Positions 16,217 to 46,825 of a DNA stretch of 64,000 nt are shown piece after piece. The translations under genes were made by a program, and so were the position numbers. The notes beneath the pieces were generated by a model that was not told the DNA's origin, made no database searches, and worked only from the letters and a program-made list of their open reading frames with translations. The stretch's first letter is position 1. Every line of letters begins with the position of its first letter. The stretch lies in the IMG/VR virus record IMGVR_UViG_3300036766_000194, positions 186,001 to 250,000 of that record, one strand, 5' to 3'.

Positions 16217-16259
16217 CTTTTCTCCAATCCCTACAGTAGAGTATAATTGGAGGAACGTC

Positions 16260-16523
16260 ATGCCAACCGGATGCAAATGTGGTGAAAATAAAACTGCTGA
16301 TGTTGGAACTCTTTGGTATGTAGAAGGAAGAAACGCTTATTCAGCCGACGCTTCAGATCTTCAACACTCTGGAGAACGAGGAAAGAAATGCCCTGGATGT
16401 AACGGACCCATGCCACCAGTACGGCTGAACTTTCTTCCAAGATCTCAAGGGGGAGAAAACATAACCCACTGGATAGGTCGATGTCTTAACTGTAAAGCCA
16501 ATATAACTATTTGGAATGACTAA
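16260..16523 (+). CDS. Zn-ribbon protein; copy of the C-terminal domain of 55090..56055
   Basis: Identical to the C-terminus of 55090..56055 from GCKCGENKTA onward; own SD (GGAGG) and promoter-like CAGTAGAGTATAAT. Confidence 0.75.
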   Translation: MPTGCKCGENKTADVGTLWYVEGRNAYSADASDLQHSGERGKKCPGCNGPMPPVRLNFLPRSQGGENITHWIGRCLNCKANITIWND

Positions 16524-16525
16524 AA
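16269..16525 (+). repeat. 257-bp inverted repeat, copy A (partner 55088..55344)
   Basis: Compared base by base with the reverse complement of 55088..55344; no mismatch found. Confidence 0.95.
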
Positions 16526-16587
16526 TTGTGTATGACCAGATGGGTAAACTCGAGGACGCAATTCTTAAAGCTGAGGAGAATAGGTGA
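16516..16587 (+). CDS. 23-aa micro-ORF MTKIVYDQMGKLEDAILKAEENR
   Basis: ATG overlaps the previous stop; IVYDQMGK comes from a 26-bp match to 55467..55492. Confidence 0.35.
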   Translation: MTKIVYDQMGKLEDAILKAEENR

Positions 16588-16651
16588 TTCATATCTTCAA
16601 GACTTTCGACCAACGTCGGGAACGCCGTATTAAAACAAAAAGGAGCCGCTA

Positions 16652-16870
16652 ATGGACACTAATCGGCAGGCAATTCTTTTTCATCTCAAAAAGGGAGCAT
16701 CTCTAAAGATCGCTCTAAATAATCCTCAGGTGGCTTTTGTTTTCTATCCTGATGAAAAGTACGTCCCAGTGAACGCTGACACGGCTGCTGCTTTAATTGA
16801 AGAAGGGAATCTCATTGAAGTAAATCCTGGAGTTTTTGATCTTCTCAAGATTGCTTCAAACATAGTATAA
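16652..16870 (+). CDS. Hypothetical protein
   Basis: AAAGGAG SD. Confidence 0.7.
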   Translation: MDTNRQAILFHLKKGASLKIALNNPQVAFVFYPDEKYVPVNADTAAALIEEGNLIEVNPGVFDLLKIASNIV

Positions 16871-17196
16871 TGTTTTGGATACTTCTATTAGTTCAAAATG
16901 TAATACTTCCTCTACTCCTCGCCTATGGTGTGTTGAAAATGGACCAATATTGGCATGGGAAGCAGGAATTCAACCGCGCCTATGCGCGTGCTGTCAGTTT
17001 AGGTGTGGATAGTCGTAAACACCCAGAAAAAGTCACCTTGGAAGCTCTATTCATGGCCAGTGAAGCAGAGTTAGAATACGCAACAGAGAATATTGGGAGA
17101 GATGTAAACCAAATCTTCAAAGAATTGGAAGAAGAAATTTCTGACGAGTTAATGGAACACGTATTTCGTGGAAGATCAAAATCCTCGGGTGCTTAA
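16870..17196 (+). CDS. Hypothetical protein with an N-terminal TM helix
   Basis: TAATG coupling; hydrophobic N-terminus. Confidence 0.7.
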   Translation: MFWILLLVQNVILPLLLAYGVLKMDQYWHGKQEFNRAYARAVSLGVDSRKHPEKVTLEALFMASEAELEYATENIGRDVNQIFKELEEEISDELMEHVFRGRSKSSGA

Positions 17197-17366
17197 TGTG
17201 ACCGTCAGACTATGACTGTTATTACGTGGTGGGGATATTTTCTTCATTAGAAAAAGCACGGGAGTTTGCTGCTGAAAAGAATTCGGCCTACTCTGGTATA
17301 CACGAATATGTTTTAGATGAAGTTTTAGGTGAACCCGGTGAAGAAGTCTATCACTCCGTCGTATAA
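17196..17366 (+). pseudogene. Small phage protein with TGA at codon 2 (pseudogene or readthrough)
   Basis: ATG TGA CCG TCA GAC TAT...; downstream frame SDYDCYYVVGIFSSLEKAREF...IHEYVLDE is open to TAA at 17366. Confidence 0.5.
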
Positions 17367-17370
17367 AACG

Positions 17371-17399
17371 AAACACCCCGCCTTTTGAGCGGGGTGTTT
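17371..17399. terminator. Bidirectional terminator between the scaffold gene and the antisense island
   Basis: Perfect 11-bp stem AAACACCCCGC/GCGGGGTGTTT. Confidence 0.85.
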
Positions 17400-17438
17400 A
17401 AACTGAAGATGCCATCTTCAGGGTTGTATTAAACTCTG

Positions 17439-18845
17439 TTACTCGTCGCCAAAGAGCAAGTCAGCAAGAGATCCCTCAGTAGGTGCCCCGGCTGTAACCT
17501 TTAACTTCTTGATGGTTTCCTTCTTAGCAGCTGCCTTAGGAGTTTCCATGACAGGCTGTTGGTCTTCCTTAATGCGCTTCTGTCCGCTGTCTTCGGGCTT
17601 CTGATCTTCAATCAATTCTGCCCAAATGTCACCAGTGTGGTCGGATTCGCTATCGCGATCATCACCCTTGAGTTCAGATTCAAAGTGATTTGCTGCCTCA
17701 CCAGTAAAGGAGGGAACTACATCCACCCCGTCCACTGAAGTAGCTTCCTTGTAAGAGGCGAATAAGGTTGCCATCGAATCGTCACCTTCTACAGAAGCAA
17801 ACATCCCGGACATTTCATTGGAATTGTTGTCCATTGATGCTGCCATCTCACCTTCTTCAGAAGGCCCGAAGAAATCTTCTCCGCCTCCCATTTCATCCAT
17901 ACCCTCTTCCATCTCTTCGCCTTCATTTGCCAAGGAATCAACCTTGTCTTCAGGCTGAGAGAAAATAGAGTTGAGATCCAGTTCTTCCTGACCCTCTTCT
18001 AGAATAGTCTCTTCAATGTTTTGAATAGCCTGTTGTGCTTCTGCAATCTGCTCAGAAACCTGTTCTTTCTTTTCTTCTGTTAACATTGTTGCAGCTTCCT
18101 CTTCAGGAGCAGGTGCTGCCTCTTCTGTAGGTACCTCTTCAGCTGCTGGTGCTTCCTCAACTGGGGCTTCTTCAGCCTCCGGAGCGGCCTCAACAGGCGC
18201 AGCGTCTCCTTCATCAGCCTTCTTAGAAACTACATGTTCCTTGCAACCTACCTTACCGCATTCTGCACACTTGGAATCTGCCTTTTTTGCAGCGGCAGAA
18301 ACAGACTTCTGTTCTTTCTCACTGCCCTCACTCTTATCAACGGAGTCAGCGGGACGAGATTCCGACTTGCTTGCGTCCATTTCCTTTGGTTCAGAACCCT
18401 TGCGACCATCTTCGTACTTGTCAGGCTGAGGTCCTGCATCCTTACGATCGTCTGCAACCTTGCCAGCATTCTTGGCGTCACCCTTAACTTCTGTGGTTAC
18501 GGCACTCTTTTCCTTATTCAATTCGGATTCGGGAGACATAAGGTCATTAAGATCCTTCTTGTGTACCGACTCATACGTCTCAGCAAATTTGGACCAGTGA
18601 GCATTGATAGCGGTCTGACGTAGAGCCGCCTTCAATACTTTAGTGGACGCGCTCAATAGCGCAGACGCCAGGTGCTGTTGCACCTCAGCGGGAGCTTTAG
18701 GTAGCATGGTCTTGGCGATGGTCCAAGCACAGACTGTGCGTACACGAGCCTCTTTGCTTGCTGCCGTTACCACTTCTTGTGCCTGCTTTGCAGCGGCAAT
18801 ACGCTCTTTTATGGGGGACTTTTCGTTAAGATTCGCCATGTTCAC
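17439..18845 (-). CDS. Prohead scaffold/core protein
   Basis: Very acidic and low-complexity; lies between the protease and decoration/MCP genes. Confidence 0.7.
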   Translation of the reverse strand: MNMANLNEKSPIKERIAAAKQAQEVVTAASKEARVRTVCAWTIAKTMLPKAPAEVQQHLASALLSASTKVLKAALRQTAINAHWSKFAETYESVHKKDLNDLMSPESELNKEKSAVTTEVKGDAKNAGKVADDRKDAGPQPDKYEDGRKGSEPKEMDASKSESRPADSVDKSEGSEKEQKSVSAAAKKADSKCAECGKVGCKEHVVSKKADEGDAAPVEAAPEAEEAPVEEAPAAEEVPTEEAAPAPEEEAATMLTEEKKEQVSEQIAEAQQAIQNIEETILEEGQEELDLNSIFSQPEDKVDSLANEGEEMEEGMDEMGGGEDFFGPSEEGEMAASMDNNSNEMSGMFASVEGDDSMATLFASYKEATSVDGVDVVPSFTGEAANHFESELKGDDRDSESDHTGDIWAELIEDQKPEDSGQKRIKEDQQPVMETPKAAAKKETIKKLKVTAGAPTEGSLADLLFGDE

Positions 18846-18947
18846 TTTCCTTTAAGAAAGATTGGGGATATACAAACCCCTTCTTCTTTGTGTTCTAAAG
18901 TTAATTTATTATCAAAAAGCGGTTATCCGCTTTTTGAATCCCTGCTA

Positions 18948-19817
18948 TTACTTCAATTTAGAAGCTATTTCACTCATTTCCAGCATTAAATCTTCATGTT
19001 CACTAACACTAGCTGCTTTTGCGAACTTGGATTCCTTATCAGATTCAGCAGAAGCCGTAGTATAAGGAGTCTTAGGACCAATCCACTCTTCCATGACTGT
19101 ATTACGTTTAACCGCCCCTGGAAAAGCGGGAGTAGCAACCCAAGAAGCCTCAACGAATTTGACTCCACCATTTTTCATTGTCTTATGGCCACAAAGTTCT
19201 GCCACACGACGGGGAACGCCATTTTCATCGTTTAAAAAAGAACCTTTTTGAAAAGCCAAGTGATTACAGTAATTTCCATTATCGGTAACTCTTGCCCCGC
19301 AAAAAGAACAAATTACCAAGTCTGTAACACAACCCATGCTCAGATACTTGACTTTGCCTGAACGGATGTCGTCAATCAACTGTGTGTGTGCAAGGTCAGT
19401 GGCTACCAAGATGTCAACTAAATAAACCCACACTCCAGAAGCAATATTTATCTTACGAAGAATCGCATCCAAAATATGCCCCTTAGCGAATTTTGAGTTT
19501 TGAAAGTGTTCAACGAAGTTAAATGCTCCTACAAATGACTTATGAGACAACTTTAAGACTTCATTAGTCCAGGCATCGTCATTGTTGTTGACAAGATGGC
19601 TGCATTCTGGCTTGATAAAATAGTCATTAGGATCATCCTCTACCATGACAGAACTCATGATTGTGCAGTGTGATAAAAGATAGATACTTTTATCTGCTTT
19701 GGCTGCTATTTTTAAAAACGATGAGGAATTTGAGAAATTAGAATACAATGTATTCCAGTCTCTAATGTTGATAACTGGGTCGGCTACTAAGGCACGTGCT
19801 GTTTTGATAAAAGGCAT
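18948..19817 (-). CDS. Prohead (capsid maturation) protease with Zn ribbon
   Basis: NNNDDAW, FVEHFQ..KGHILDA, LSMGC (candidate catalytic Ser), CSFCG...CNHL, FVEASWVATPAFPGA; canonical gene position. Confidence 0.75.
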   Translation of the reverse strand: MPFIKTARALVADPVINIRDWNTLYSNFSNSSSFLKIAAKADKSIYLLSHCTIMSSVMVEDDPNDYFIKPECSHLVNNNDDAWTNEVLKLSHKSFVGAFNFVEHFQNSKFAKGHILDAILRKINIASGVWVYLVDILVATDLAHTQLIDDIRSGKVKYLSMGCVTDLVICSFCGARVTDNGNYCNHLAFQKGSFLNDENGVPRRVAELCGHKTMKNGGVKFVEASWVATPAFPGAVKRNTVMEEWIGPKTPYTTASAESDKESKFAKAASVSEHEDLMLEMSEIASKLK

Positions 19818-19877
19818 AGCTATAATGTGTGTTGTAATTAAATAATTACAGTATCAAGTAGTATAGGAGCACTACTT

Positions 19878-20807
19878 ATGCGTAAAACTGATATAAGAGA
19901 TATAAGATTCGATTGTTGGGTGGCTCTACGAGAAACTAGGAATGGATATTGGCTATGTAGGTGCGATTGTGGATTTGAAAAAGAGGTTCTAAAGAACAAT
20001 CTAGTACAAGGTCGTAGTCGTAGCTGTGGCTGTAACGCCCCCTACAAAGATCTAACAGGAAAGGTTTTTACACGATTAACAGTGATAGAAAAAGCTCCTT
20101 CACAGGTAACAAATAAAGAACGACACACTATGTGGAAAGTGCGTTGTCAGTGTGGTACAGAAAAGATAGTTTCTGGAAAAAACCTACAGTCTCATCACAC
20201 CAAAAGTTGTGGATGTTTAGGAAAAAGTGCCGTTTGGTTGCACTTAGATATAAGTGGAAAACGTTTTGGTAGGTTGAAAGTATTGGAAAAAGTAGGGGTA
20301 GAAAATGATAGAACTATTTGGAGAACTTTATGTGATTGTGGTGCTGAAAAGACTATTGCTGGTTCAGATCTCACATATGGAAATACAAAAAGTTGTGGTT
20401 GCTTAAAATACACCAGTAGAATGTTGTCTTTCGGTAGAGCGGCAAGAAATAATATGTATGAACACTATCGTTTAAACTGTGCAAAAAAACGAAATCTACC
20501 TTGGGACCTAACTAACGAACAATTTGACAAGTTAACACAGGAGAATTGCTACTATTGTGGAATGTCTCCTTCTAATCGTTGTAGGGGTTCAAAACTGGGA
20601 GGAGATTTTGTCTACAACGGTTTGGATAGAAAAAACAATGATCTAGGGTACGTTATAGAAAATGTAGTAACTTGCTGTAAACACTGTAACCGAGCTAAAT
20701 CTAGTCTTTCTTTTTTAGAATTTATAGCCTATATAAAAAGACTATGCACTCATTTCCAGAATTTTAGGGCAAAGGATCATGAAATGTTTTTAAGTATTCA
20801 TCCTTAG
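19878..20807 (+). CDS. HNH-type homing endonuclease with four CxCG/KSCGC repeat domains
   Basis: Repeats G..F.RL.V....W...C.CG......NL....TKSCGC; C-terminal CYYCG...NGLDRKNNDLGY..ENVVTCCKHCNRAK. Confidence 0.85.
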   Translation: MRKTDIRDIRFDCWVALRETRNGYWLCRCDCGFEKEVLKNNLVQGRSRSCGCNAPYKDLTGKVFTRLTVIEKAPSQVTNKERHTMWKVRCQCGTEKIVSGKNLQSHHTKSCGCLGKSAVWLHLDISGKRFGRLKVLEKVGVENDRTIWRTLCDCGAEKTIAGSDLTYGNTKSCGCLKYTSRMLSFGRAARNNMYEHYRLNCAKKRNLPWDLTNEQFDKLTQENCYYCGMSPSNRCRGSKLGGDFVYNGLDRKNNDLGYVIENVVTCCKHCNRAKSSLSFLEFIAYIKRLCTHFQNFRAKDHEMFLSIHP

Positions 20808-21918
20808 ACTCTGACCAAAGTGCTTCCATATCAACACCTTCCATTCGGGCCATTTCCTTCATACGAGGATCAGACATGAAACGTAATTTGACATCTTCTT
20901 CCTGCTCTGATATGAAATCCAACCAATTATCAGTAGCAACCTTTTCCATGGCTTGCTTAGATCTTAACCAGTGATTTATAAGATTTTGTTCACGACTGTC
21001 TAATTCTACCCAGGGACGGAAGAACAGCATTGAAGTTGGTTTGCCCGTTACTCCTAGCAATTTGCAACGACCTTTTGGAGTTAAAGCATTCCATGCCTGT
21101 TCTATGTTCTCACTAGAAATCTTTTTACTGGTTCCCCCACTGATTGTATCCTGTTTAATTTCTTCTTTAACATCTTCATCGAGATGACGACGCATATCGT
21201 TACGTGGCGGGAGTTTGGTAGGAGTCTCGTGGAATTCAACTTCTGAATCCCGAGGCTTAGAAGACGGAGTCGTGTTGAACTTATGTGCTACAGGAGGCTT
21301 ACCACGCTCACGACGTTTACGATTAAACAGCCAGGGTTCATCCTTAAAGCGACTGGGCATCTTATCAAAATGTCTCAATTGTCGAGTAACATTGGGAGCA
21401 AAGGTTTGAACATTTCGCGCAGCCGTCTTGCCCTTTAATCCTTGTAAGAATCCGTCTAATTCGAACAGTTCTCCCTGTTGAACGGGGATACGTTTCTCAA
21501 ATAATGTAAACCCCCAGTTGGTAACTTCTAACCTAAGACCAGGAAGATTTTTATTATTATAATGACTATACCCATCACATCGGTGGTATCTTCCACGGTG
21601 GTCTGAAGCGGTGGGAATCTTATACCAACCCATTTCTTCTATAGAATCTTGACTAGACCCATATCTTACATTTTCAGGTTCTGTACCTTTTTGAGCGTAA
21701 GGGAATCTGTCAGTAGATTCAGATGATGCGCGAGGATCCTGCGCTGCTTCAGGTCTGTTCAATTCTATACTGGTCTGATCTAGGGCTTGCTTTTTCTTCT
21801 TTTCATCTTCTTCACAAATACACTTAGCGGTAGGTTTTAGGCAAAAAGCGCAAGTATTATGCTTCCAAGATGTGCTTGTTTTATGTGTGGGAGCTACCGT
21901 TTGTTTTTTACTAACCAT
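20764..21918 (-). CDS. Mosaic hypothetical virion-associated protein
   Basis: ORF track; modules separated by KQA/KTAA/ISS/KVA motifs. Confidence 0.75.
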   Translation of the reverse strand: MVSKKQTVAPTHKTSTSWKHNTCAFCLKPTAKCICEEDEKKKKQALDQTSIELNRPEAAQDPRASSESTDRFPYAQKGTEPENVRYGSSQDSIEEMGWYKIPTASDHRGRYHRCDGYSHYNNKNLPGLRLEVTNWGFTLFEKRIPVQQGELFELDGFLQGLKGKTAARNVQTFAPNVTRQLRHFDKMPSRFKDEPWLFNRKRRERGKPPVAHKFNTTPSSKPRDSEVEFHETPTKLPPRNDMRRHLDEDVKEEIKQDTISGGTSKKISSENIEQAWNALTPKGRCKLLGVTGKPTSMLFFRPWVELDSREQNLINHWLRSKQAMEKVATDNWLDFISEQEEDVKLRFMSDPRMKEMARMEGVDMEALWSESKDEYLKTFHDPLP

Positions 21919-22000
21919 ATCACCCTCAAGAAATAAAGACGCAGCATGAGGTAGCTCCGCTGCGCCTTTTAACTAGCTAACTACTGTAGCATCACCCTTG

Positions 22001-22687
22001 TTATTTCCGCTGTTGGAAAAGAAGCGAGCGACCTGTAGCATCACCCTTGTTATTTCCGCTATCAATAAAGTCTCCGTAAACGCTGCCAGAGATATCAAAA
22101 ATGTCTGTAACGGTAATGCTGCAATCTTCTGCTACAGCTGCGGTTTCTACCTGATAGCCAGAGTTGTAAGAGTTCATCCAGCATCCTTCGTATACCGTAA
22201 CCACCGCATACAGCCCAGAATTACCCAGGTTGTTCAGCCCGCCTTCATTCGGTACATCTGCCTTAGAAGCCTTACCATGATTGCGTGTTTCTGAAGCAAG
22301 TTCAGAAAAAACTATTTCTGTCTTGATGTCAAAGGGCCATTTGTGATGCTTCAAAGATCTTACCAATCCACTAACTCCTGCTTTATAACCAAACATCTGC
22401 TGTAGGTTAGCAAGATAAAGAGCGGTACGAGTAACGCTAATGGTTGTTGGCTGCGTTACACCAGGGACTAGTTCCGCGATCTGATCACCATAACCAAGTC
22501 CACGAATAGTTTCAATATTCTTAGTCTCTGACACGCTGAAGGACGAAGTCACTCCTAGCTTTACAAACTTACCTACATCCACTGCGGGAGTGAAAATCTT
22601 AAACCGGGTACTAATGACCGATTCGGTCTGACCCGTTGTTCCTTGGCGGTAAAGATATCCGCCGATTGCGTTTGATCCGCTTGCCAT
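22001..22687 (-). CDS. Tail tube protein
   Basis: IRGLGYGDQIAELVPG motif; downstream of the sheath gene. Confidence 0.8.
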   Translation of the reverse strand: MASGSNAIGGYLYRQGTTGQTESVISTRFKIFTPAVDVGKFVKLGVTSSFSVSETKNIETIRGLGYGDQIAELVPGVTQPTTISVTRTALYLANLQQMFGYKAGVSGLVRSLKHHKWPFDIKTEIVFSELASETRNHGKASKADVPNEGGLNNLGNSGLYAVVTVYEGCWMNSYNSGYQVETAAVAEDCSITVTDIFDISGSVYGDFIDSGNNKGDATGRSLLFQQRK

Positions 22688-22741
22688 GTTGTTTCTCCTT
22701 GTTGCTACTAATTAGCAACGAAGTTGTTTTCTACTATTCCG

Positions 22742-25387
22742 TTATTCAGCTTCTGCTATGTTCAAACCGAAGAACTTAACAGATGCTTCCTTAGATGATT
22801 CTTTCTTTGCTGCCTTGGTAGCTTCTTCCTCAGCTTCTTCAGCCATGAGCATCTTGTTAAATGCTTTTTTAGCATCTTCAAAAAGAAGCATTGCGCTGTA
22901 GACGGCTTCAACTGAGTTACGGATAGCTGCCACATCATTCACTTTAGTTAAGGGTTTAAGTGATAGATACATCTTCTTGAGATCTTCCTCAGCATCTTCA
23001 CAAGCCTTCAACGCTTTGGTAACGGTCATCTCAGCTGCTAATTTCTCGGGCAGGACTGTTGCTGGACGCTTAATCCCTGTATTATCGTCACGCATTTTGT
23101 GCGCTTCGGCAACTTCAGGAACACGCTTACCTCCGTCACAAATTTCGGAGGTCTCGTCATTAGAAGTCCAAGCTCCCCCTATCGCAGCGGAAGCGAATTT
23201 CTTTACGAATAAAGATGCGTTCTTTTCAAGAAGATAAGCCGCACGATGAGGAGTATAACCTTCACCCTTCATATGCCATGCTAACGCCCAGGGATTATCA
23301 ATCTCTGGGTGCTTTTTCATCTTCTTAACAGTACCTTCCCATCCTTCAGGAGCAACCGCATTCTTATTAACAGAAGCTGCTTTTTCTTCCTGTGAAGCTG
23401 CATATTCCTTCTCACAAGCTCCACACATATCAGAACCCGCCATAGCCTTGTTACCACATTCACATTTTACAGGCTGACCATGACTCTTTGCTGACTTTTG
23501 TTCAACTGGACGATTCTTTAGAACCGAAGAAAGCTGTTCAATCCAAAGTACCGCAGACTTATCATCCATAAATTCGGGAACGCCCGCTAGAGCCTTAATG
23601 GCTGCTCCTATAGCCTTAGTTCCTAGGGATTGAGGATCCAGTCCACCTGTTCCAGACATATCTTCTGTAGGTAAACCTGATTCGGACACATCTTCAACAG
23701 GGAGGTCGTCTTCTACTGGGATATCGTCTTCAAGGATATCCTCAGGTGGTTCAACCATGTCTATTTCTTTATCTGCACGCTTTCTCACAAAAGCACCTCT
23801 CTTATTTAATCTCTTCTGACCTTCTTCAGAACGAAAGAAATCTTGAAGCGTTTCGGGACCATGACCTTCACTTACTATATCATTCGCTCCGCCACCACCA
23901 TAGGCTTCCCAACTACCATCTTCTTTTACTACCACAGCTTCTAAACCAGGGGTTTCATCGCCGTGTACGGGTCCCCAATAAACAGTTCCCATTTCCCTAC
24001 CTATTGGAGCATTGGTGTCTGCTTCAAAATCCAACGAGTTAAGAATCTGTTCATAATTGAGTGACATAGCTCTCTTTTTCTTAGCTATAACTGGAACGGC
24101 GATAGGAACGGTAGATTTAGGAGCAGATGAATTCTTGATAGGTTCTGATGCTGGAGAAGGAGATTCTGTTTCTGCTTTCTTTTTACGTTTTGGCATACAC
24201 TTCTTACAATATTCTTCATTACCAGAATGAAGTTTACCGCATAGCTCACACTTTGTACGATCATCATCCGAGGAGGACCCTACAATAGATTCACCCATTG
24301 GTCCTAAGTATCCTGCAATAGAGTCGGCTAAGTCAATTTCTCCCTTAGTACGAGCAAGTCTTTCTATACTCTTTAGGGCATTAGGATTTTGTTCTGCGTA
24401 ACTTTCTCCGTGGAGAATATCCTTAAGTTGTTCTTCAATAGCCCAACCATATCTAGAACTACAAATATCAATAAAATCTTGCATGTCATATCTAGTGAGA
24501 GAACCAGTAAACATGTCTTCTGCTTCAATCTCAGGTTCTTCATCTGCTACGGATGAGGTAACAACCCCACCAACTTCTCCCGGATCCACAGCTTCAACTG
24601 GGGCACTGAATGCAGAACTTGGACGAGGAATAGACGTAGGAGGAGTCTTTCCCACTAAAGGACTAGATTCAACAGTAAAACGGGCTTCAAACCAAGAATC
24701 TTTAGGCCAAGCATTCCAATGATTGCTAGCAGCTACAACAAATGCCCTCAATCCTACGTTATTCAAAGCCTTTACAACTTTATCGGCAAACTTACGTTCG
24801 TCCATACCGTGAGTATAGAAATACCCATGTTTTGCTATTAAAACTCTCTGTTGTGGGCTGTAACTTACATCAGCAATACCAGACAAAGCATCTCTTGCCT
24901 GTAGCTTTATCTTGGTGTTCATATCGGTTGCGGTTTTAACAGAAGCTAAAGCAGACCCTGGGCCTGTAATGGGCTTGGGTGCTGAATCTAATTTGAATTG
25001 GTCTACCTCTCTTGGGTCAAATTCATCAGTTTCTTCGAATCCATGTTTCATAAACCAACTAAAATCTATAGGTTGGCGACGCAACATCCCGTTAGCAAAG
25101 TCTACGTCAACTTCTTTACTTCCTAGACTATTACGAACCAAAACACCCTGAATACCACTTATAGATATTCCAGATTTATCAACAATAACAGTAACCTCAT
25201 CTAAGATCTTTTTAGGTTCTTCAAAATCATTAATCTCAGGCCAATTAGTAACCTTCATGTCAGCTATCAGAGGCTTAGACCCGTCTTCAAAAGGTTCTAC
25301 TCCCGTCACCCCATACCAGTCTGTCTTATCAAAAGGACGAAGTGCTTTGGAAGAAACCTTATTCCGTTCGTTGAAAAGTTTACTCAT
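22742..25387 (-). CDS. 881-aa mosaic virion-associated protein
   Basis: ORF track; short domains in low-complexity linkers; APEGWEGTVKKMKKHPEIDNPWALAW module. Confidence 0.8.
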   Translation of the reverse strand: MSKLFNERNKVSSKALRPFDKTDWYGVTGVEPFEDGSKPLIADMKVTNWPEINDFEEPKKILDEVTVIVDKSGISISGIQGVLVRNSLGSKEVDVDFANGMLRRQPIDFSWFMKHGFEETDEFDPREVDQFKLDSAPKPITGPGSALASVKTATDMNTKIKLQARDALSGIADVSYSPQQRVLIAKHGYFYTHGMDERKFADKVVKALNNVGLRAFVVAASNHWNAWPKDSWFEARFTVESSPLVGKTPPTSIPRPSSAFSAPVEAVDPGEVGGVVTSSVADEEPEIEAEDMFTGSLTRYDMQDFIDICSSRYGWAIEEQLKDILHGESYAEQNPNALKSIERLARTKGEIDLADSIAGYLGPMGESIVGSSSDDDRTKCELCGKLHSGNEEYCKKCMPKRKKKAETESPSPASEPIKNSSAPKSTVPIAVPVIAKKKRAMSLNYEQILNSLDFEADTNAPIGREMGTVYWGPVHGDETPGLEAVVVKEDGSWEAYGGGGANDIVSEGHGPETLQDFFRSEEGQKRLNKRGAFVRKRADKEIDMVEPPEDILEDDIPVEDDLPVEDVSESGLPTEDMSGTGGLDPQSLGTKAIGAAIKALAGVPEFMDDKSAVLWIEQLSSVLKNRPVEQKSAKSHGQPVKCECGNKAMAGSDMCGACEKEYAASQEEKAASVNKNAVAPEGWEGTVKKMKKHPEIDNPWALAWHMKGEGYTPHRAAYLLEKNASLFVKKFASAAIGGAWTSNDETSEICDGGKRVPEVAEAHKMRDDNTGIKRPATVLPEKLAAEMTVTKALKACEDAEEDLKKMYLSLKPLTKVNDVAAIRNSVEAVYSAMLLFEDAKKAFNKMLMAEEAEEEATKAAKKESSKEASVKFFGLNIAEAE

Positions 25388-25836
25388 AGTGTTGTATCCG
25401 TTAAGGACGGTACTACGCTTTGTGCTCTAAGACTCTGAATGGCCTGGCCTATACGAGAAGAAGGTCCTAAGGAAGCCATAACAGAATACCATATTTGAGC
25501 AGCCTTTGCAGGGTCAGTAGTTACAACTTGTAGCGGACCTTGAACAGGAACGGGTTGATTGGGTCCTGGTGAAGGAGGCAAAGCTGTCATGAATTGAGCA
25601 GTGTAATTTTGCAACTGAGTTGTGATACCAACTAAAAGTTGAGTCGTTGGAAATTGAAAAGAAAACGTACCAGGGGGATTAGGGTCTGTAAAAGTACCCG
25701 CAATATTAACTTGAGGATCACCAAAAGCTAATATCTTAGATTTATCCGTCGTATCATTCACGTCCCCAACGAACGAAGCCTGTAGAACGACGCTTATAAT
25801 ACCGTTTTGTTGAGTTATGACCGGATGAATTTTCAT
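25384..25836 (-). CDS. Hypothetical structural protein
   Basis: Lies between the sheath and tube region; ATGA coupling. Confidence 0.7.
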   Translation of the reverse strand: MKIHPVITQQNGIISVVLQASFVGDVNDTTDKSKILAFGDPQVNIAGTFTDPNPPGTFSFQFPTTQLLVGITTQLQNYTAQFMTALPPSPGPNQPVPVQGPLQVVTTDPAKAAQIWYSVMASLGPSSRIGQAIQSLRAQSVVPSLTDTTL

Positions 25837-25885
25837 TCTGCTATTCCCTCAGTTAATGAGGGGCCATTATGACCCCTCGTATATC

Positions 25886-28800
25886 TTACAGGTTTGTAGT
25901 AACCGTGAACGTTACGCTGATGTAAAGCAGGCTGAAGATAGGCTTAAAGCTAACCGTGATATCCAACAACGTCGGATCGTTAGGATCCGGAACCACAGAT
26001 AGATTCTTATAGCCGGAAATAATCTCCTGATTTACCAATATGCGTAACAGAGAGTTACATACAGCTGTTACATCATTGACGAGTGTTCCTACGAACTTAC
26101 GTCCAATAAACTGATCCAGAGCGGTGCGGAACTGTTGACGAACATAATCCGTAACCGTTGTAGATGTTGGTTCAGAAGTAAGAACATTAGAATTATCCGT
26201 AGACATATAATGACGAACCTTTAGTGCGCCATTGTTTTCCACCAGCAGGGTTAACCCATCAGCTGCCATTAAGTCCAGAGTAGGTTCATCAAGGCGTGTT
26301 CCGAGCAAGCGGCTGAAGCCAACAACTTGTTGATTTGTCAAAGTTGTTGCTACGTCATTCGCGGGGTTCACATTCAAACCTGCTAAAGCAGCTGCTAGGA
26401 AAGGACCATCTACAGCATACTCAGTTGCTGCAGCAGTAGATTGTGTAGCCTGTAGAAGAATTCCAGCCACAGAAGGAGCTACTGCGATAATACGGCTATT
26501 CTTAAAGCTGCGTGCTGCTTGACGTGCTGCTGAAGGAGTGGTATACTGGTCAAACCCAACGAATCCAATACCTTCCGCCTGAATACGGGGAGCAGCCTGA
26601 GTTATCAAGAAGCGACTCAAGAACTGCTGTACCGTAGAACTGGTACTGAGAGGTACGATTACCGAAGCAAATGAAGAGCTACCCGGTAACGGGGATGCTA
26701 AAGACTGGATTGCGTTGATAAATGACTGATCCGAAGCAACTGGAGTTCCGGTCTGTTTTGGAACTTGAATGACTCCAAACTGCTGTGCACCGTTTTCTGT
26801 TAACAGAGAAATACCCAAGGACACACGGTTGGTTGTGTTAGGAGTTCCGTAGACTTTGTAAGCATCTGAAGCATTGGTGTAGAGTTGAAGAGCAAAATCG
26901 CTGGCTTGTTTTGCTGTCTCAAAGGTTAGGTAGTAAAACTGTCCATTGTTAGGGTTGCTACCAGACTTATTAAATGTGGCAACAGTTGCTGTATCTGTAG
27001 GATTCATTCCAAATGTCGTAGACACAGAAGTTCTCAAACCACCTAGCACAATGACAGGAGTTACTCCCGTTACAAATGGAGAGTCCTTACTATCTTCCAG
27101 AAGGAAGGTAATTTTGTCTCCTGGAGCAAAAGAGTACGCTGGGCTAGGAAGTGTCGTATATCCGTAAGGTAGAGCATTACGAGGGTCTACGATTGTGAAC
27201 TTCACCGCAGTGTTAGGATCCAGGTAGGTTTCTCCTAAGTAGCTAGAGAGACCAAAAACGGGTCCGACGAACTGCCATGTAATAGCTGTGTAAGGAGACA
27301 CACTACCATCCACGGTGTTTCCAGCACTACCCCAAGTAGGTGCTGCTGCTCCAGAAGTACCCGGAACGATAACTTTCTGTATATTTCCGTTGGTATCAAC
27401 TACGGTATCATTGGTTGAGAAAGCTGTTAGGGCTGCCCATAGCTTTGAAGCAGCATTTACATATGCTGGTGTTGTTGCGTTTCCAGTACGACCTAATCCA
27501 TCGGCTGCTGTCTGTGTTGAAGTACGGCTGGAGGACACAACATAACGATTTGCTATTGCTGCAGTAACTTGAGCCGTTCCGCTAGAGAAAGCCACTAATG
27601 CGTGAGCGATTGACAAGTCAGTTGTTATACCTGCTCCTAATGAAGCCAGTATCTGACCAGCAAGAGGAGTGGTTACAATGTTTCCACTGAAGCCCGTGAC
27701 ACCTGTGAAGAGATTGATAATTCCACTTAATGTTAGAGCACCTGTAGTTGCAGATATGTTGACAAAAACTTGCTCTACAGTAGTAGGAGCTAGACCGTTA
27801 GAAGTCCAAGTAACTCCACTATCTGAGGTTGTGACTCCCGCAGTCGCACTGAATCCCCCTGGAATAGTTCCACCAGAAGTTCCAGCCACCGTTACAACTT
27901 GGATGCTAGTTCCAGTTATGATGATTTGACCCGCGACATAAGCGTGATTTGATTGCCAAGAAGCAAATGCTGTTGCGACTCCTGTGCTACCCGAGAAAGT
28001 TCCTGCGCTCGTATAAACTGTGTAAGCGGGAAGAATAGGTTGAGTACCATTGCCAACCATTGTGATGCTTGTGGTAGCGTTGGGTCCTGTTCCTGTGGTT
28101 GTAGCCGTAAATAGTAGAGAATCGGAGCCTGTTTGAGCCACAGAGGCTGTTGCCTGAGTTGCAGGGGTGACGATACGAGTATGACCATCCTGTTGAAAGG
28201 TCAATGTAAGGGTTTCATCAGGTCCACCAATACCTCCCTCGATGTCGGGGAAACTAAAGGGCCAAACGATTCCTGTGGTAGCGAAACTTCCATCAGTAAC
28301 CGAAGTTCCGGTTGATCCTGCGGCGGTTCCTGTAACCTTGATAATAGAACTTCCTGTTTCACTTACTACCGAATAAGTTCCTTGTCCAGGAGTGTTGGCA
28401 TTAACAACAGACAACGTAAATGTGTGGTCATTAAGAATCGTACGATAGCCACTTACATAAACTTTGCTGCTTGCTGCAGGAGGATTGTAAAGTGTAATTA
28501 CTCCTGTAGCTCCAACAAGACGGGAAACCGTAACTGCTCCTGCTGCTTGTGCAGAAGCAGGGTCGATGCCGACATACACTAAAATCTTGCTAGGATCATC
28601 GGTTACTTTTGCCAGACCACTACCGTCTACGGGAGTGAATGCAGAAGTAAATACAGCATTGACGCCGTCAGCAACTCCAGTAGCCGGAACCATGTAGACG
28701 TTTTCGTCTACCAAGGTTGTAGTTATCTGGGTAGCACTTAAAGGAGTGAATCCTGCTGTCTGCTTACCAATTGAGGTAACGGCAGCGGCACCCCAATAGA

Positions 28801-29941
28801 TTTTATTGTTAGCTAAAACATAGTCCACACCATTGATGTAGTCAGCACGTCCAGGACCAAGTCCTACACGATCTATTTGAACTATGTTATTTGCTGGTAG
28901 AAGATCAAAAGTATTCTGCCAGTTATTTGTATAATAAGTGACAGTTAAGGTAGACCCGAAAGTTACCCCAGTTGCTAACGTAACCAGACCGTGAGCACCA
29001 TCTACAGTGGTAACAGTTGCGGCTACTCCATTAACCTTGACTTGAACATCGGCAGTGTTTGTAGTTACGACTCCGCCGTTGGTCCCGTCTACTATAGGTG
29101 TAAAATGAGTCTTAAACACAGTGTTGGTAGAAGGCCCAGCACCACCCGAAAGGAAGGCAGCGGTATTAGCAACACCTACTGTGGTATCAATAGAACTTCC
29201 TGTTAGATACCCTTGAGAAGTAGGAATACCAGCAGCAATTAAATTGCTAATGTCCGTTAGGGTTCTGACCGATACGTTATCAGCCTTCAGAAGTTCAATG
29301 CTGATATTAGCGGTTCCTGCTCCTGTTACGGCTGTTACGTCAGACTTACCGTTAACCGGGGAAGTGGACAAAGTAAAAGTCACATTGACCAAATTACCCA
29401 GTTTACCAGGAGTATTTATACCAATTACAATGGAATGTCCTACAGCCGGAGTATAGGTCAGGCTTGCAAAAGAAGGGATTTGAGCGGAAAGATCCTCATT
29501 TACCTTGTGAGTGTCCGAACGCTTGAAGAAATACGTTACTAAAAGAACTGCTCCTGCTGGGATAATTTGTTGAGTCTGAAAAGAACCCAAGGTACCGTTT
29601 AGAGACACGACCGTTACCGGGATACCGTTGCTTGTTACCTGTATCTTAGTGTAATCGTTAGTTACAGTTCCAGAACCATCCCCCGTTGTTATAGGGAAGT
29701 AGGTTACTTGGAAAGTACGGGTAAGTCCCGTTGCCTGAGCCGAAATATCTTCGTTAACAGACTGGTCATCAGCGGAAGCCGAAGAACCACGAAAGATCTC
29801 TTGATCAGAAAAAACGAAATTCTCAACACCTTCTCCGATGAGTACGGGAATTCGCGCAGTGCCAAATAACGGCGCGGATGTTGGAGCTAATACAACGCTA
29901 GTGTATACTCCCGGAGGTGCGTATGATTGAAATAGTGCCAT
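25886..29941 (-). CDS. Contractile tail sheath protein with large inserted beta domains
   Basis: N-terminal YAPPGVY...RIPVLIGEG; C-terminal TDYVRQQFRTALDQFIGRK...DPTLLDITVSFKPIFSLLYISVTFTV. Confidence 0.9.
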   Translation of the reverse strand: MALFQSYAPPGVYTSVVLAPTSAPLFGTARIPVLIGEGVENFVFSDQEIFRGSSASADDQSVNEDISAQATGLTRTFQVTYFPITTGDGSGTVTNDYTKIQVTSNGIPVTVVSLNGTLGSFQTQQIIPAGAVLLVTYFFKRSDTHKVNEDLSAQIPSFASLTYTPAVGHSIVIGINTPGKLGNLVNVTFTLSTSPVNGKSDVTAVTGAGTANISIELLKADNVSVRTLTDISNLIAAGIPTSQGYLTGSSIDTTVGVANTAAFLSGGAGPSTNTVFKTHFTPIVDGTNGGVVTTNTADVQVKVNGVAATVTTVDGAHGLVTLATGVTFGSTLTVTYYTNNWQNTFDLLPANNIVQIDRVGLGPGRADYINGVDYVLANNKIYWGAAAVTSIGKQTAGFTPLSATQITTTLVDENVYMVPATGVADGVNAVFTSAFTPVDGSGLAKVTDDPSKILVYVGIDPASAQAAGAVTVSRLVGATGVITLYNPPAASSKVYVSGYRTILNDHTFTLSVVNANTPGQGTYSVVSETGSSIIKVTGTAAGSTGTSVTDGSFATTGIVWPFSFPDIEGGIGGPDETLTLTFQQDGHTRIVTPATQATASVAQTGSDSLLFTATTTGTGPNATTSITMVGNGTQPILPAYTVYTSAGTFSGSTGVATAFASWQSNHAYVAGQIIITGTSIQVVTVAGTSGGTIPGGFSATAGVTTSDSGVTWTSNGLAPTTVEQVFVNISATTGALTLSGIINLFTGVTGFSGNIVTTPLAGQILASLGAGITTDLSIAHALVAFSSGTAQVTAAIANRYVVSSSRTSTQTAADGLGRTGNATTPAYVNAASKLWAALTAFSTNDTVVDTNGNIQKVIVPGTSGAAAPTWGSAGNTVDGSVSPYTAITWQFVGPVFGLSSYLGETYLDPNTAVKFTIVDPRNALPYGYTTLPSPAYSFAPGDKITFLLEDSKDSPFVTGVTPVIVLGGLRTSVSTTFGMNPTDTATVATFNKSGSNPNNGQFYYLTFETAKQASDFALQLYTNASDAYKVYGTPNTTNRVSLGISLLTENGAQQFGVIQVPKQTGTPVASDQSFINAIQSLASPLPGSSSFASVIVPLSTSSTVQQFLSRFLITQAAPRIQAEGIGFVGFDQYTTPSAARQAARSFKNSRIIAVAPSVAGILLQATQSTAAATEYAVDGPFLAAALAGLNVNPANDVATTLTNQQVVGFSRLLGTRLDEPTLDLMAADGLTLLVENNGALKVRHYMSTDNSNVLTSEPTSTTVTDYVRQQFRTALDQFIGRKFVGTLVNDVTAVCNSLLRILVNQEIISGYKNLSVVPDPNDPTLLDITVSFKPIFSLLYISVTFTVTTNL

Positions 29942-30009
29942 GTGTCTTTTGCTCCCTTGAAGGAGATTGCCTTCTTAGTTGGACCTAATAAACTAAATTC
30001 TACTAACAC

Positions 30010-30140
30010 AAACGGTAATGCTGTACACATTCAAGAGCTTGTTTCATCCATGAATCTGCTTTGTCACCGATTCACATTCATTTAATAGTTCTTCTAAACA
30101 TCCTAATCGTCTATTACACTCACGACAGACCGACTCTTAC
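30010..30140 (-). pseudogene. Remnant of an endonuclease-VII-type homing endonuclease
   Basis: Frame-broken pieces CRECNRRLGCLEELL and DSWMKQALECVQHY. Confidence 0.5.
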
Positions 30141-30172
30141 GATTATTTCTAACAGATTTAGTTTCAGGTTCA

Positions 30173-30586
30173 TTAACGCTTATTAATAAGTTTAGCATCT
30201 CCATCATCATACTGAGGCTTAAAGCCATCCTTTTCTACTGTTTTCATAGCATCGGTACGACGAAACTTCTGTTTTGTATCAATGGGTTGGTATTCATTGG
30301 TACCCGTAGCAGTTAACCCAACAACTCCAGATTCCTGGCGAACTTTATTACGAACTTCTTGTCTCTCGTTAATTCGTGCCCATCTTGCATCTGCGTCACG
30401 ACCTACAACCACATCAATGGGAGCCGTATCCATGGTAGAAACCCCAAGAGATACTAAAGGAATGACAAAATCCATTCTTCCCTTACAACTAGGGCATTCT
30501 ATTGTTTTAGGAAGTTGTTTCTCAACGGATTGAATAACTTCCTTAACTATATCACACTTTTCACACTTGAAATCATATCTTGCCAT
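30173..30586 (-). CDS. FmdB-type zinc-ribbon protein
   Basis: MARYDFKCEKCD...ECPSCKG; AAGGAG SD. Confidence 0.8.
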   Translation of the reverse strand: MARYDFKCEKCDIVKEVIQSVEKQLPKTIECPSCKGRMDFVIPLVSLGVSTMDTAPIDVVVGRDADARWARINERQEVRNKVRQESGVVGLTATGTNEYQPIDTKQKFRRTDAMKTVEKDGFKPQYDDGDAKLINKR

Positions 30587-30599
30587 TAAGATTCTCCTT

Positions 30600-30867
30600 A
30601 AAATAAATATTGTTTAGGTGCTGGACCCTCTAAGAGAAGACCCTGTTGCTTGGCCCTTCCCTTACGACCTATCCACACTCTGAAATCCAAATTGATTCTC
30701 CCATTCTAACTATCTCTTTCTCTAGAGATTTTTGCTTTTCTTCTGTAGGGTGTTACCCTTCATAGAAGAATTTTCTAACTGAACTTCACTTAAATGCTGT
30801 TTGGTCTCTTCTGAATGAGACATACTATGGTACCATTGACTCTATTTGTAATTTTGTAGATTTGCAT
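30600..30867 (-). pseudogene. Decayed GIY-YIG/NUMOD3 homing endonuclease
   Basis: MQIYKITNRVNG start, then an internal deletion/frameshift into SHSEETKQHLS and further broken frames. Confidence 0.7.
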
Positions 30868-30876
30868 TGTTTATTT

Positions 30877-32454: not shown

Positions 32455-32484
32455 GATGAAGTCCTCTATAAGGGGACAGAAAGG

Positions 32485-32961
32485 TTACTTTACGATCTTT
32501 ACGCGCTGAACGTCGTAATCCTGGTTTCCTGGAGGTGGCGGAGGAACAATAATCTGTACGGGTTCAATCCAACTATGAATGCTACGACGGACGTCCCACA
32601 CGCTGACTACTGCGTGAATCTTAGGATACCAAACATTTTCAAGTTCTATGCTGTAATTCTGGAAGTTATAATCAATAATTTCCCACCAGCTACCATCGTG
32701 GGCTTGGAATCTAGCCCCGGCGATCAGATAGGAAAAGAATGTGTTGTCTCCTTGAATGGGGGAAAGAGGATTAGGCAACTGCATTGTTCCCGGATTAGGC
32801 TTGAACTGTGAGAACGGAGTAACTACTTGATCATCGGGATCTCCAACCATACGTTGAAGAGCAGGCGTGGTTCCTGTGTGTTCTACTTCTAGCATACGGG
32901 CAGTCTTGATATTTGCTACTTCAGAAAGTTCTGCCGCAAGGATATTTGGGTTAGTGCTCAT
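32485..32961 (-). CDS. Hypothetical neck-module protein
   Basis: SD and promoter motif upstream. Confidence 0.7.
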   Translation of the reverse strand: MSTNPNILAAELSEVANIKTARMLEVEHTGTTPALQRMVGDPDDQVVTPFSQFKPNPGTMQLPNPLSPIQGDNTFFSYLIAGARFQAHDGSWWEIIDYNFQNYSIELENVWYPKIHAVVSVWDVRRSIHSWIEPVQIIVPPPPPGNQDYDVQRVKIVK

Positions 32962-32997
32962 AAAGCCTCTCTCTAATGTAGCTGAAAGTAGTTTTCC

Positions 32998-34272: not shown

Positions 34273-34311
34273 GCAATGCGATCCTCTTGTAAGTTACTGA
34301 TAATAAAGGAC

Positions 34312-35199: not shown

Positions 35200-35288
35200 T
35201 CCGGATCAAGAAAGGAGAAATAAGACTTCAAATTAGCATCTGGAAACCGATCCTCCATCACTTTCCGCAAATTCACCTGTATCTCCAT
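35172..35288 (-). CDS. 38-aa hypothetical protein
   Basis: GAGGGAG SD before ATG 35288; the longer ORF-track version is probably over-extended. Confidence 0.45.
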   Translation of the reverse strand: MEIQVNLRKVMEDRFPDANLKSYFSFLDPDCLLCQGGV

Positions 35289-35317
35289 AGAGTCTCCCTC
35301 TATAGAGCGGCGGAAAG

Positions 35318-35605
35318 TTAATATAGGATAGGATGATCCTGAACTTTCGCATCTGCTGAGAAGAACAAGTATCCCGGCCAGTTGCGATCGTAGCGGAGGA
35401 GATACAGATGGAAGTGAAGAACCCATCCACGGCCCTTCCAGAACGCCGGGGCATTGATGCCAAAGCCTAGAGGGAAAACGAAATAGAGGGATACCGGATC
35501 CCATCCTGACTTAAAACTCAATTTTTGAGACAACCAGGGTCCCAGCCCCCAAAGAGTTGTCCATCTCTTATCTGTTCCTTCGTTTATGAACCCTTGTCCA
35601 CCCAT
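35318..35605 (-). CDS. Hypothetical, Trp/Phe-rich protein
   Basis: GAGGTG SD and promoter motif. Confidence 0.6.
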   Translation of the reverse strand: MGGQGFINEGTDKRWTTLWGLGPWLSQKLSFKSGWDPVSLYFVFPLGFGINAPAFWKGRGWVLHFHLYLLRYDRNWPGYLFFSADAKVQDHPILY

Positions 35606-46822: not shown

Positions 46823-46825
46823 AAA

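What the first reader, a model, noticed from the sequence alone, without database searches (positions are those of the whole stretch)
16269..16525. Exact 257-bp inverted duplication 39 kb apart frees a domain as its own gene
Seen: identical to 55088..55344 in opposite orientation. The copy is the Zn-ribbon domain that follows NKTA in the 55090 protein, now with a new start (MPT), SD and class-2 promoter motif. Perfect identity implies a very recent event. Recombination between the copies would invert about 38.5 kb (16526-55087), including the tail and accessory genes.
Basis: seen in the sequence. Interest (0 to 1): 0.65.

Follow-up and report, generated by a model that had tools for sequence, protein, structure and literature searches.

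The report
Recent inverted partial-gene copy in jumbo phage
A 300-kb phage from sediment carries a real, exact 257-bp inverted copy of the zinc-ribbon tail end of a baseplate-region gene, pasted beside a homing endonuclease gene, which makes a small new reading frame and could flip 38.5 kb; this is an ordinary kind of phage genome scar with some instructive details.

Summary
Window 16269-16525 (+) and 55088-55344 (-) are 100% identical over 257 nt. In the likely source run the repeat has twice the depth of its four flanks, and its junctions occur in two further sediment studies.

The copy went from locus 2 to locus 1.
- Orthologues at 56-65% identity already carry the zinc-ribbon domain fused to the 321-aa protein.
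- The repeat starts inside a lineage-specific Cys-rich linker array.
- A second 26-nt piece of the same gene (codons IVYDQMGK) sits directly after copy 1, in permuted order.

Copy 1 lies 53 nt downstream of a GIY-YIG/NUMOD3 homing endonuclease gene, in a known endonuclease hot spot between the scaffold and decoration genes. It sits behind a promoter-like motif, a Shine-Dalgarno site and an ATG, giving an 87-aa ORF. That is the usual size of the free-standing members of this small unnamed family.

I read it as a two-piece templated repair patch, not a programmed switch; the genome has no invertase. In one population an in-frame 150-bp deletion allele that removes the first zinc knuckle is about as common as the full allele, so the ORF looks dispensable.

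One 27.6-kb metagenome contig carries the recombinant junction expected of the 38.5-kb inversion. No reads were available to tell a true isomer from a misjoin.

The parts
16269..16525 (+). Copy 1 of the 257-nt repeat (derived copy): last 84 codons, stop and 2 nt of the 321-aa gene
55088..55344 (-). Copy 2 of the repeat (source): native 3' end of the 321-aa gene
16260..16523 (+). 87-aa ORF: M-P-T plus the copied linker unit and zinc-ribbon domain (CPGC ... CLNC, ends IWND)
55090..56055 (-). 321-aa gene of the baseplate module: conserved N-domain of about 215 aa, Cys-rich linker, zinc-ribbon domain
16524..16549 (+). Second patch: 26 nt identical to 55467-55492(-), codons IVYDQMGK of the 321-aa gene. 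It overlaps the repeat's end by 2 nt (AA). In the source gene it lies 123 nt upstream of the repeat
55467..55492 (-). Source of the 26-nt patch, in the conserved N-domain (also conserved in the 47%-identical orthologue)
55324..55395 (-). Four degenerate 18-nt units coding CHCGPN/CKCGAN/CKCPPG/CKCGEN (Cys-rich linker). The repeat's 5' border (55344) falls inside unit 3
16229..16259 (+). Promoter-like motif (TATAAT 16242-16247), GGAGGA 16249-16254, 5-nt spacer before the ATG. One of a 5-site motif family in the genome
15611..16216 (+). Free-standing GIY-YIG + NUMOD3 homing endonuclease gene; it ends 53 nt before copy 1
16259..16415 (+). Span bounded by two CATGCCA direct repeats (16259-16265, 16409-16415). 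The 150-bp in-frame deletion allele joins them, leaving a 117-nt repeat and a 37-aa ORF
16526..55087 (.). 38,562-nt segment between the arms, which homologous exchange would invert
16652..17399 (+). Rest of the antisense island: ORFs of 72, 108 and 46 aa with no relatives found, closed by a strong hairpin terminator at 17371-17399 facing the scaffold gene

Best explanation
This is a genuine, evolutionarily young partial-gene duplication in a roughly 300-kb phage.

The last 257 nt of a baseplate-module gene (linker unit, zinc-ribbon domain, stop) were copied in inverted orientation into an accessory island 38.5 kb away. The island sits between the capsid scaffold and decoration genes. The copy lies right after a free-standing GIY-YIG homing endonuclease gene.

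The copy is followed at once by a second, 26-nt piece taken from 123 nt further upstream in the same gene and joined at a 2-nt overlap. The borders do not coincide with any homology between the two loci. So the patch was most likely laid down by break repair that copied an ectopic template and switched template once (inferred). The break was plausibly linked to the neighbouring endonuclease or to homing into this hot spot (inferred).

The patch landed in frame behind an existing promoter-like motif, ribosome-binding site and ATG. That created an 87-aa ORF the size of the free-standing members of this domain family. Whether the ORF is used is not shown.

The two arms are substrates for the phage's own RecA/UvsX-type recombination, which would flip 38.5 kb without changing any protein. 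A later slip between two CATGCCA repeats removed 150 bp in part of the population. This shortened the repeat to 117 nt and disabled the ORF.
For: Two copies are real:
- Exact 257-nt inverted pair.
- Depth 65.5 against 33-34 in the flanks, with four flank unitigs.
- Two profile matches in the genome.
- Junctions also present in other samples.

Direction is locus 2 to locus 1:
- Orthologues P0015-P0017 (56-65% identity) already have the domain fused, with the same gene order 1315-439-333-218 aa.
- The repeat begins inside an 18-nt Cys-codon array that continues upstream only at locus 2.
- The array is absent from the orthologues and from the free-standing homologues.
- The 26-nt patch encodes IVYDQMGK, which is conserved in the 47%-identical orthologue.

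The join is non-homologous:
- Flanks outside the 257 nt are unrelated.
- Only a 2-nt overlap exists at the inner junction.

Endonuclease context:
- GIY-YIG + NUMOD3 gene at 15611-16216.
- In 80 relatives the scaffold-decoration gap either holds an antisense GIY-YIG gene or is about 200 bp and empty. None has the 87-, 72- or 108-aa ORFs.

Other points:
- Promoter-like motif family.
- Deletion allele.
- RecA-like gene present; no serine or tyrosine recombinase.
- A second, independent patchwork ORF built from two near-identical ectopic pieces lies at window 50261-50587. Such events therefore recur in this genome.
Against: - The link to the homing endonuclease rests on adjacency only; no cleavage site is known.
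- No relative with an 'empty' version of this particular island was found, so the pre-insertion sequence is unknown.
- The in-frame landing behind an ATG, and the match of the ORF's size to free-standing family members, could instead point to an older resident gene.
- No RNA or protein data exist.
- The order of flanks across a 257-nt repeat cannot be read from the k=31 contigs that were the only read-level data.
Confidence: 0.7

Rival explanations
1. Both genome isomers really exist. Homologous exchange between the arms flips the 38.5-kb segment in natural populations, so the window shows only one of two orientations.
For: - Contig Ga0315268_10001412 (27.6 kb) runs from the tail genes through the 321-aa gene and the repeat into the sequence that follows copy 1 in the window.
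- The phage encodes a RecA/UvsX-like recombinase.
- The flip changes no protein, because both arms end with the same codons and stop.
Against: - In the same metagenome, contig _10021015 links the endonuclease side to the window-type downstream sequence across the 117-nt allele. That allele is short enough to be spanned by reads.
- The reciprocal junction (endonuclease side, repeat, 212-aa gene) was not found. The 212-aa side is a dangling 1-kb contig.
- A 257-nt repeat exceeds the usual k and read length, so a misjoin is easy in a two-allele mixture.
- The window order keeps the gene order of relatives on both sides.
Confidence: 0.3
2. The 87-aa ORF is a working new gene. The freed zinc-ribbon domain is expressed from its own promoter and acts apart from the baseplate-module protein, for example as a soluble partner or competitor.
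For: - Intact ORF with a ribosome-binding site and a promoter-like motif shared with four other genes.
- Most homologues are free-standing proteins of 74-89 aa, so the domain can fold and act alone.
- AlphaFold gives pLDDT 75-88 for parts of the domain.
Against: - The 150-bp deletion allele removes the CPGC knuckle yet is at least as frequent as the full allele in one population.
- There is no divergence between the copies from which selection could be read.
- There are no expression data.
Confidence: 0.25
3. The free-standing gene at locus 1 is the older one. Either the fusion at locus 2 arose from it, or the two are old paralogues kept identical by gene conversion.
For: - The family is mostly free-standing and sits in arrays of small ORFs like locus 1.
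- The ORF's size is typical for the family.
Against: - The fusion is conserved in orthologues at 56-65% identity.
- The repeat includes a linker unit that belongs to the array at locus 2.
- Locus 1 carries a 26-nt piece of the conserved N-domain.
- The identity ends abruptly with unrelated flanks.
- No relative has a zinc-ribbon gene in the scaffold-decoration gap.
- Five large relatives lack the domain altogether (with its control).
Confidence: 0.06
4. Programmed invertible segment, like Mu G or P1 C, that switches tail genes.
For: Inverted repeats flank a segment that includes tail genes.
Against: - No serine or tyrosine recombinase in the complete genome.
- The arms are 257 nt of coding sequence, not short crossover sites.
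- Both orientations give identical proteins.
- One arm is polymorphic and partly deleted.
Confidence: 0.02
5. Assembly artefact: only one copy exists.
For: The genome is a metagenome assembly. Its 'terminal repeat' is just 127 nt, the usual largest k.
Against: - Twofold depth of the repeat unitig and four distinct flank unitigs.
- The same junctions in other samples and assemblies.
Confidence: 0.02

Closest known systems
Free-standing GIY-YIG homing endonucleases of large lytic phages (T4 Seg type) and the genetic-exchange boundaries they mark (Barth et al. 2023, PMC10448857; T4 Seg biology from general knowledge)
   Same: - A GIY-YIG + NUMOD3 gene sits between essential capsid genes.
- The same gap is occupied or empty in different relatives.
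- Foreign or ectopic DNA lies directly at its border.
   Different: - Here the DNA at the border is an ectopic copy of the phage's own tail-region gene.
- No cleavage site or homing event has been shown.
Templated, microhomology-joined insertions at repaired breaks (template switching, as in microhomology-mediated break-induced replication; general knowledge)
   Same: - Two pieces of one donor gene are joined in permuted order at a 2-nt overlap.
- The outer borders are non-homologous.
- A later 150-bp loss occurred between 7-nt repeats.
   Different: - The mechanism is inferred from the scar only.
- The enzymes in this phage are unknown.
Flip-flop isomerisation across inverted repeats by general recombination (plastid inverted repeats, herpesvirus segments; general knowledge)
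   Same: An inverted identical pair flanks a unique segment, a recombinase gene is present, and one contig has the recombinant junction.
   Different: - The arms are only 257 nt.
- The isomers are unproven.
- The flip would split the capsid and baseplate gene clusters.
Site-specific invertible segments of phages Mu and P1 (Gin/Cin; general knowledge)
   Same: Inverted repeats lie around tail-related genes.
   Different: There is no invertase, no alternative protein ends, and the arms are long coding sequence.
Gene fission by partial duplication (a domain of a fusion protein re-appearing as its own gene; general knowledge)
   Same: A domain that is fused in this lineage and free-standing elsewhere is re-issued as a separate ORF.
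   Different: - The event is too young to show selection.
- A disabling allele is common.

Membership tests
Segmental (partial-gene) duplication | Two copies per genome, not an assembly collapse or expansion | tested here: met
   Repeat unitig at depth 65.5 against 33-34 in four flank unitigs; two profile matches
Segmental (partial-gene) duplication | An identifiable source copy in its ancestral context | tested here: met
   The fusion and the gene order are conserved in orthologues; the linker array and the 26-nt patch point to locus 2
Homing-endonuclease-associated insertion | An endonuclease gene of a homing family directly adjacent | tested here: met
   GIY-YIG 6.3e-11 and NUMOD3 5.7e-6; PHROG homing endonuclease 6e-27; 53 nt from copy 1
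Homing-endonuclease-associated insertion | Presence/absence polymorphism of the endonuclease gene at this site among relatives | tested here: met
   The scaffold-decoration gap has an antisense GIY-YIG gene in many relatives and is about 200 bp and empty in others
Homing-endonuclease-associated insertion | Cleavage at or near the insertion site by this enzyme | not testable with these tools
   Needs an in-vitro or in-vivo cleavage assay
Programmed invertible segment (Gin/Cin/Hin type or shufflon) | A site-specific recombinase encoded by the element | tested here: not met
   No Resolvase or Phage_integrase match in the complete genome, with controls positive
Programmed invertible segment (Gin/Cin/Hin type or shufflon) | Inversion exchanges alternative gene ends | tested here: not met
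   Both arms carry the same codons and stop, so the proteins are unchanged
Inverted-repeat flip-flop isomers | Both orientations present in the population | tested here: inconclusive
   One contig has the recombinant junction; the reciprocal junction was not found. The only read data were k=31 contigs, which cannot link flanks
Zinc ribbon (four-Cys knuckle pair) | Two CxxC knuckles about 25-35 residues apart, conserved across homologues | tested here: met
   CPxC and CxxC are conserved in 13 sequences, with CxxC replaced by HxC in two. Only weak generic zinc-ribbon hits in Pfam and PDB; no curated family
Zinc ribbon (four-Cys knuckle pair) | Zinc binding | not testable with these tools
   Needs metal analysis of the purified protein

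The most novel reading that the evidence does not exclude
A homing-endonuclease hot spot in a jumbo phage captured a templated patch of the phage's own baseplate-module gene. That patch re-created a free-standing zinc-ribbon gene. It also set up a 257-nt inverted pair that now drives a real, reversible 38.5-kb flip in wild populations. Selection against the flip or the ORF is already eroding the repeat through the 150-bp deletion allele. That would be gene birth, genome isomerism and repeat decay seen together in nature.
Probability: 0.2. Interest if true: 0.55.

Novelty: new member of a known kind. Interest (0 to 1): 0.32.

Why it matters
The case is clean and well bounded. It shows how large lytic phages make new small ORFs: a two-piece templated patch beside a homing endonuclease gene, landing in frame behind an existing promoter. 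The source, the direction and a later decay allele are all readable from the sequence.

It also warns that the order of a 38.5-kb block holding capsid, sheath and baseplate genes cannot be trusted from short-read assemblies of this phage. Two assemblies of nearly the same phage disagree across the repeat.

The zinc-ribbon family itself ends in I/V-F/W/Y-N-D and is free-standing or C-terminally fused. It is undescribed and small: 13 homologues were found among 1.8 billion representatives.

Tried and rejected
- blastn of both loci against 50,697 phage records: no match.
- Pfam and PHROGs on the 87-aa and 321-aa proteins: nothing.
- Word search with the 87-aa ORF: only itself.
- AlphaFold of the 321-aa protein without an alignment: useless, pLDDT 39.
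- AlphaFold with a 53-row alignment gave a good N-domain (pLDDT above 90 for residues 11-130). Foldseek on PDB then had no match at E <= 0.001, and VIA-align reached only Z 5.1 (LptE-like, not convincing). The fold and role of the N-domain stay open.
- ESM Atlas by features: unnamed clusters only.
- PDB and Pfam with the family profile: generic zinc-finger and zinc-ribbon noise.
- Search for an 'empty-site' relative through the 108-aa neighbour: only the same phage.
- Closest endonuclease relative (L062, 62% identity): different small ORFs beside it.
- Invertase or integrase as the driver of inversion: none found.
- The 558-nt X3 contig that runs 321-aa gene, repeat, 212-aa gene is not evidence of linkage. 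A k=31 path through a 257-nt repeat is uninformative.
- Homology extending 5' of the repeat (ATGCCAACC against TGTCCTCCA) is not above chance.
- I first read the deletion as 143 bp from BLAST coordinates. Read laying shows it is 150 bp with a 7-nt overlap.

Full report
**Observation**

The repeat finder on the whole window gives a single inverted pair: 16269-16525 and 55088-55344, 257 nt, 100% complementary, with 38,562 nt between the arms. I read both loci directly.

The window is bases 186001-250000 of a 299,875-bp IMG/VR virus record. Its 'direct terminal repeat' is only 127 nt, which is the signature of a circular assembly path at k=127.

**Is it an assembly artefact?**

No raw reads were on offer, only Logan contigs built at k=31. 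They still settle copy number.

- In run X1, probably the source sample, the repeat is a separate 257-nt unitig at depth 65.5.
- Four different flank unitigs at depth 33-34 each overlap it by 30 nt. So there are two copies per genome and all four junctions are real.
- The junctions recur in run X2 and run X3, from other studies.
- They also recur in three contigs of metagenome Ga0315268. X2 carries the same SNPs and 15-nt insertion as those contigs, so X2 and Ga0315268 are one population.

**Anatomy of locus 2 (the source)**

On the minus strand lie four genes in a row:

| Product | Assignment |
|---|---|
| 1305 aa | baseplate wedge subunit |
| 411 aa | weak baseplate match |
| 321 aa | the gene in question |
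| 212 aa | virion protein, weakly like a baseplate wedge 3 tail fibre network component |

The 321-aa protein has 47 homologues with a conserved N-domain of about 215 aa and a variable C-terminal part, for total lengths of 193-558 aa.

Three homologues at 56-65% identity (P0015-P0017) carry the same zinc-ribbon domain at their C-terminus. One of them lies in a contig with the same gene order, 1315-439-333-218 aa. A 47%-identical orthologue has another C-terminus but the same neighbours. So the fusion is old, and the order 321-aa gene then 212-aa gene is ancestral.

Between the N-domain and the zinc ribbon, this phage alone has four degenerate 18-nt units coding CHCGPN, CKCGAN, CKCPPG and CKCGEN at 55395-55324. 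TRF reports two of these units, at 55352-55389. The repeat's 5' border at 55344 falls inside the third unit.

**Anatomy of locus 1 (the copy)**

The capsid genes run on the minus strand: protease at 18948-19817, a scaffold-like acidic protein at 17439-18845, a 203-aa protein at 14949-15560 and the major head protein at 13947-14924.

Between the scaffold gene and the 203-aa gene lies a plus-strand island. In order it holds:

1. A GIY-YIG + NUMOD3 homing endonuclease gene at 15611-16216.
2. A promoter-like motif with TATAAT at 16242-16247, GGAGGA at 16249-16254 and an ATG at 16260.
3. The repeat.
4. ORFs of 72, 108 and 46 aa.
5. A strong hairpin terminator.

The 26-nt motif recurs with 5-6 mismatches before four other starts in the genome, each followed by GGAGGAACGT and an ATG.

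In 80 relatives whose head protein is 78-85% identical, the same gap either holds an antisense GIY-YIG gene or is about 200 bp and empty. None has the 87-, 72- or 108-aa ORFs. The genome has five GIY-YIG genes, three of them in this window.

**A second patch**

Directly after copy 1, overlapping its last two bases, come 26 nt (16524-16549) identical to 55467-55492 on the minus strand. In the source gene these are the codons IVYDQMGK, 123 nt upstream of the repeat. They are conserved in the 47%-identical orthologue.

So locus 1 holds two pieces of the same donor gene in permuted order. Outside these pieces the two loci are unrelated.

**Direction and mechanism**

Four things all point from locus 2 to locus 1:

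- the old fusion;
- the linker unit inside the repeat;
- the 26-nt piece of the conserved N-domain;
- the lack of any zinc-ribbon gene at this place in relatives.

The abrupt non-homologous borders and the permuted two-piece structure joined at 2 nt fit repair synthesis on an ectopic template with one template switch. That is inference from the scar.

The position in an endonuclease hot spot, 53 nt from the endonuclease gene, makes a break linked to that enzyme or to homing the most likely trigger. This rests on adjacency alone. Published work shows nuclease genes at boundaries of exchange in phages (PMC10448857).

The genome holds a second, independent patchwork ORF:

- An exact 97-nt copy of the start region and first 17 codons of a 326-aa gene forms its start.
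- It is joined at shared DRDAD codons to a 249-nt, 99.6% identical inverted copy of the end of a 79-aa ORF 143 kb away.

Such events therefore recur in this phage.

**The product**

The ORF 16260-16523 codes 87 aa. It has no Pfam or PHROG match and no word-search relative.

Full HMMER against 1.84 billion representatives found 13 distant homologues. Most are free-standing proteins of 74-89 aa. Some are C-terminal domains of 104-149-aa proteins, and some sit inside proteins of 500-850 aa.

Twelve aligned homologues (nine of these plus the three fused orthologues) share this pattern: W, then Y-S/T-A-E/D-A/M-S, then CPxC, then E-I-T-H-W-x-G-x-C-x-x-C, with a C-terminus of I/V-F/W/Y-N-D. They lie in arrays of small ORFs on phage-like contigs.

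The copy therefore re-creates the usual free-standing format. The function of the family is unknown. Five large relatives lack it, and the same profile finds both copies in this genome as a control.

**A decay allele**

Contig Ga0315268_10021015 and a unitig of X2 join 16258 to 16409 across two CATGCCA repeats. This is an in-frame loss of 150 bp.

- It leaves a 37-aa ORF without the CPGC knuckle and a repeat of 117 nt.
- In X2 this junction has depth 8.5 against 5.8 for the full junction.
- It was not seen in X1.
- Both alleles share the inner junction with the 26-nt patch, so the deletion is secondary.

A disabling allele at this frequency argues that the ORF is dispensable. It could also mean that the shorter repeat is favoured.

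**Inversion**

There is no serine or tyrosine recombinase in the genome, and a RecA/UvsX-like gene is present. So any flip would be by general recombination. It would change no protein, but it would split the capsid and baseplate clusters.

Evidence for a flipped form:

- Contig Ga0315268_10001412 (27.6 kb) runs from the tail genes through the 321-aa gene and the repeat into the sequence that follows copy 1 in the window.

Evidence against, or neutral:

- In the same sample the deletion-allele contig links the endonuclease side to that same downstream sequence across only 117 nt.
- The 212-aa side is a dangling 1-kb contig.
- The reciprocal junction was not found.

With two alleles mixed and a repeat longer than the reads, a misjoin is at least as likely as a true isomer. 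I put the isomer at about 0.3. The window's order agrees with the gene order of relatives on both sides.

**Age**

The duplication is shared by populations whose flanks differ by 0.1-0.7%. About 1.3 differences would be expected in 257 nt at that divergence. Zero differences is compatible with simple youth and needs no gene conversion.

**Verdict**

The feature is real and well explained, and of a known kind: a partial-gene duplication beside a homing endonuclease gene. Three details are worth keeping: the two-piece patch, the decay allele, and two assemblies that disagree across the repeat.

Noticed in passing
window 50261-50587 and 49862-49958; genome 93052-93334: A second patchwork ORF (78 aa, 50304-50540, minus strand). 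An exact 97-nt copy of the start region and first 17 codons of the 326-aa gene (48931-49911) is joined at shared DRDAD codons to a 249-nt, 99.6% identical inverted copy of the 3' part of a 79-aa ORF 143 kb away.
   Followed up: partly
window 50242-50369: Two tandem 64-nt units (91% identical) inside the same patchwork region.
   Followed up: no
window 4996-5250(-), 10325-10573(-), 15614-15859(+), 19878-20807(+): The capsid region is crowded with homing-type nuclease genes: three GIY-YIG genes and one HNH gene within 16 kb, and five GIY-YIG genes in the genome.
   Followed up: partly
genome ends (1-127 = 299749-299875): The recorded 'direct terminal repeat' is exactly 127 nt, i.e. an assembler overlap of a circular path and not evidence of physical terminal repeats. 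Larger imperfect repeats (307-378 nt, 89-92%) lie near the ends.
   Followed up: no
window 38914-40308(-): A nicotinamide phosphoribosyltransferase gene (PHROG 448, E 6e-131), an auxiliary metabolic gene inside the segment that would be inverted.
   Followed up: no
contig holding P0002 (sample 3300041809; no DNA locus returned): The closest free-standing homologue of the zinc-ribbon protein (85 aa, 47% identity) lies directly upstream of a TnpB/IS605 OrfB-like gene.
   Followed up: no
L104 (GCA_052915985.1 contig): A contig joins a truncated baseplate gene and the fused orthologue to bacterial genes (ABC transporter, aminotransferase, MarR). It is either a chimeric assembly or an integrated or degraded phage.
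   Followed up: no
321-aa protein homologues (P0015-P0061): The conserved 215-aa N-domain carries very different C-terminal extensions in different phages (total 193-558 aa). This looks like a swappable C-terminal module. The N-domain model is confident but has no convincing PDB match.
   Followed up: partly
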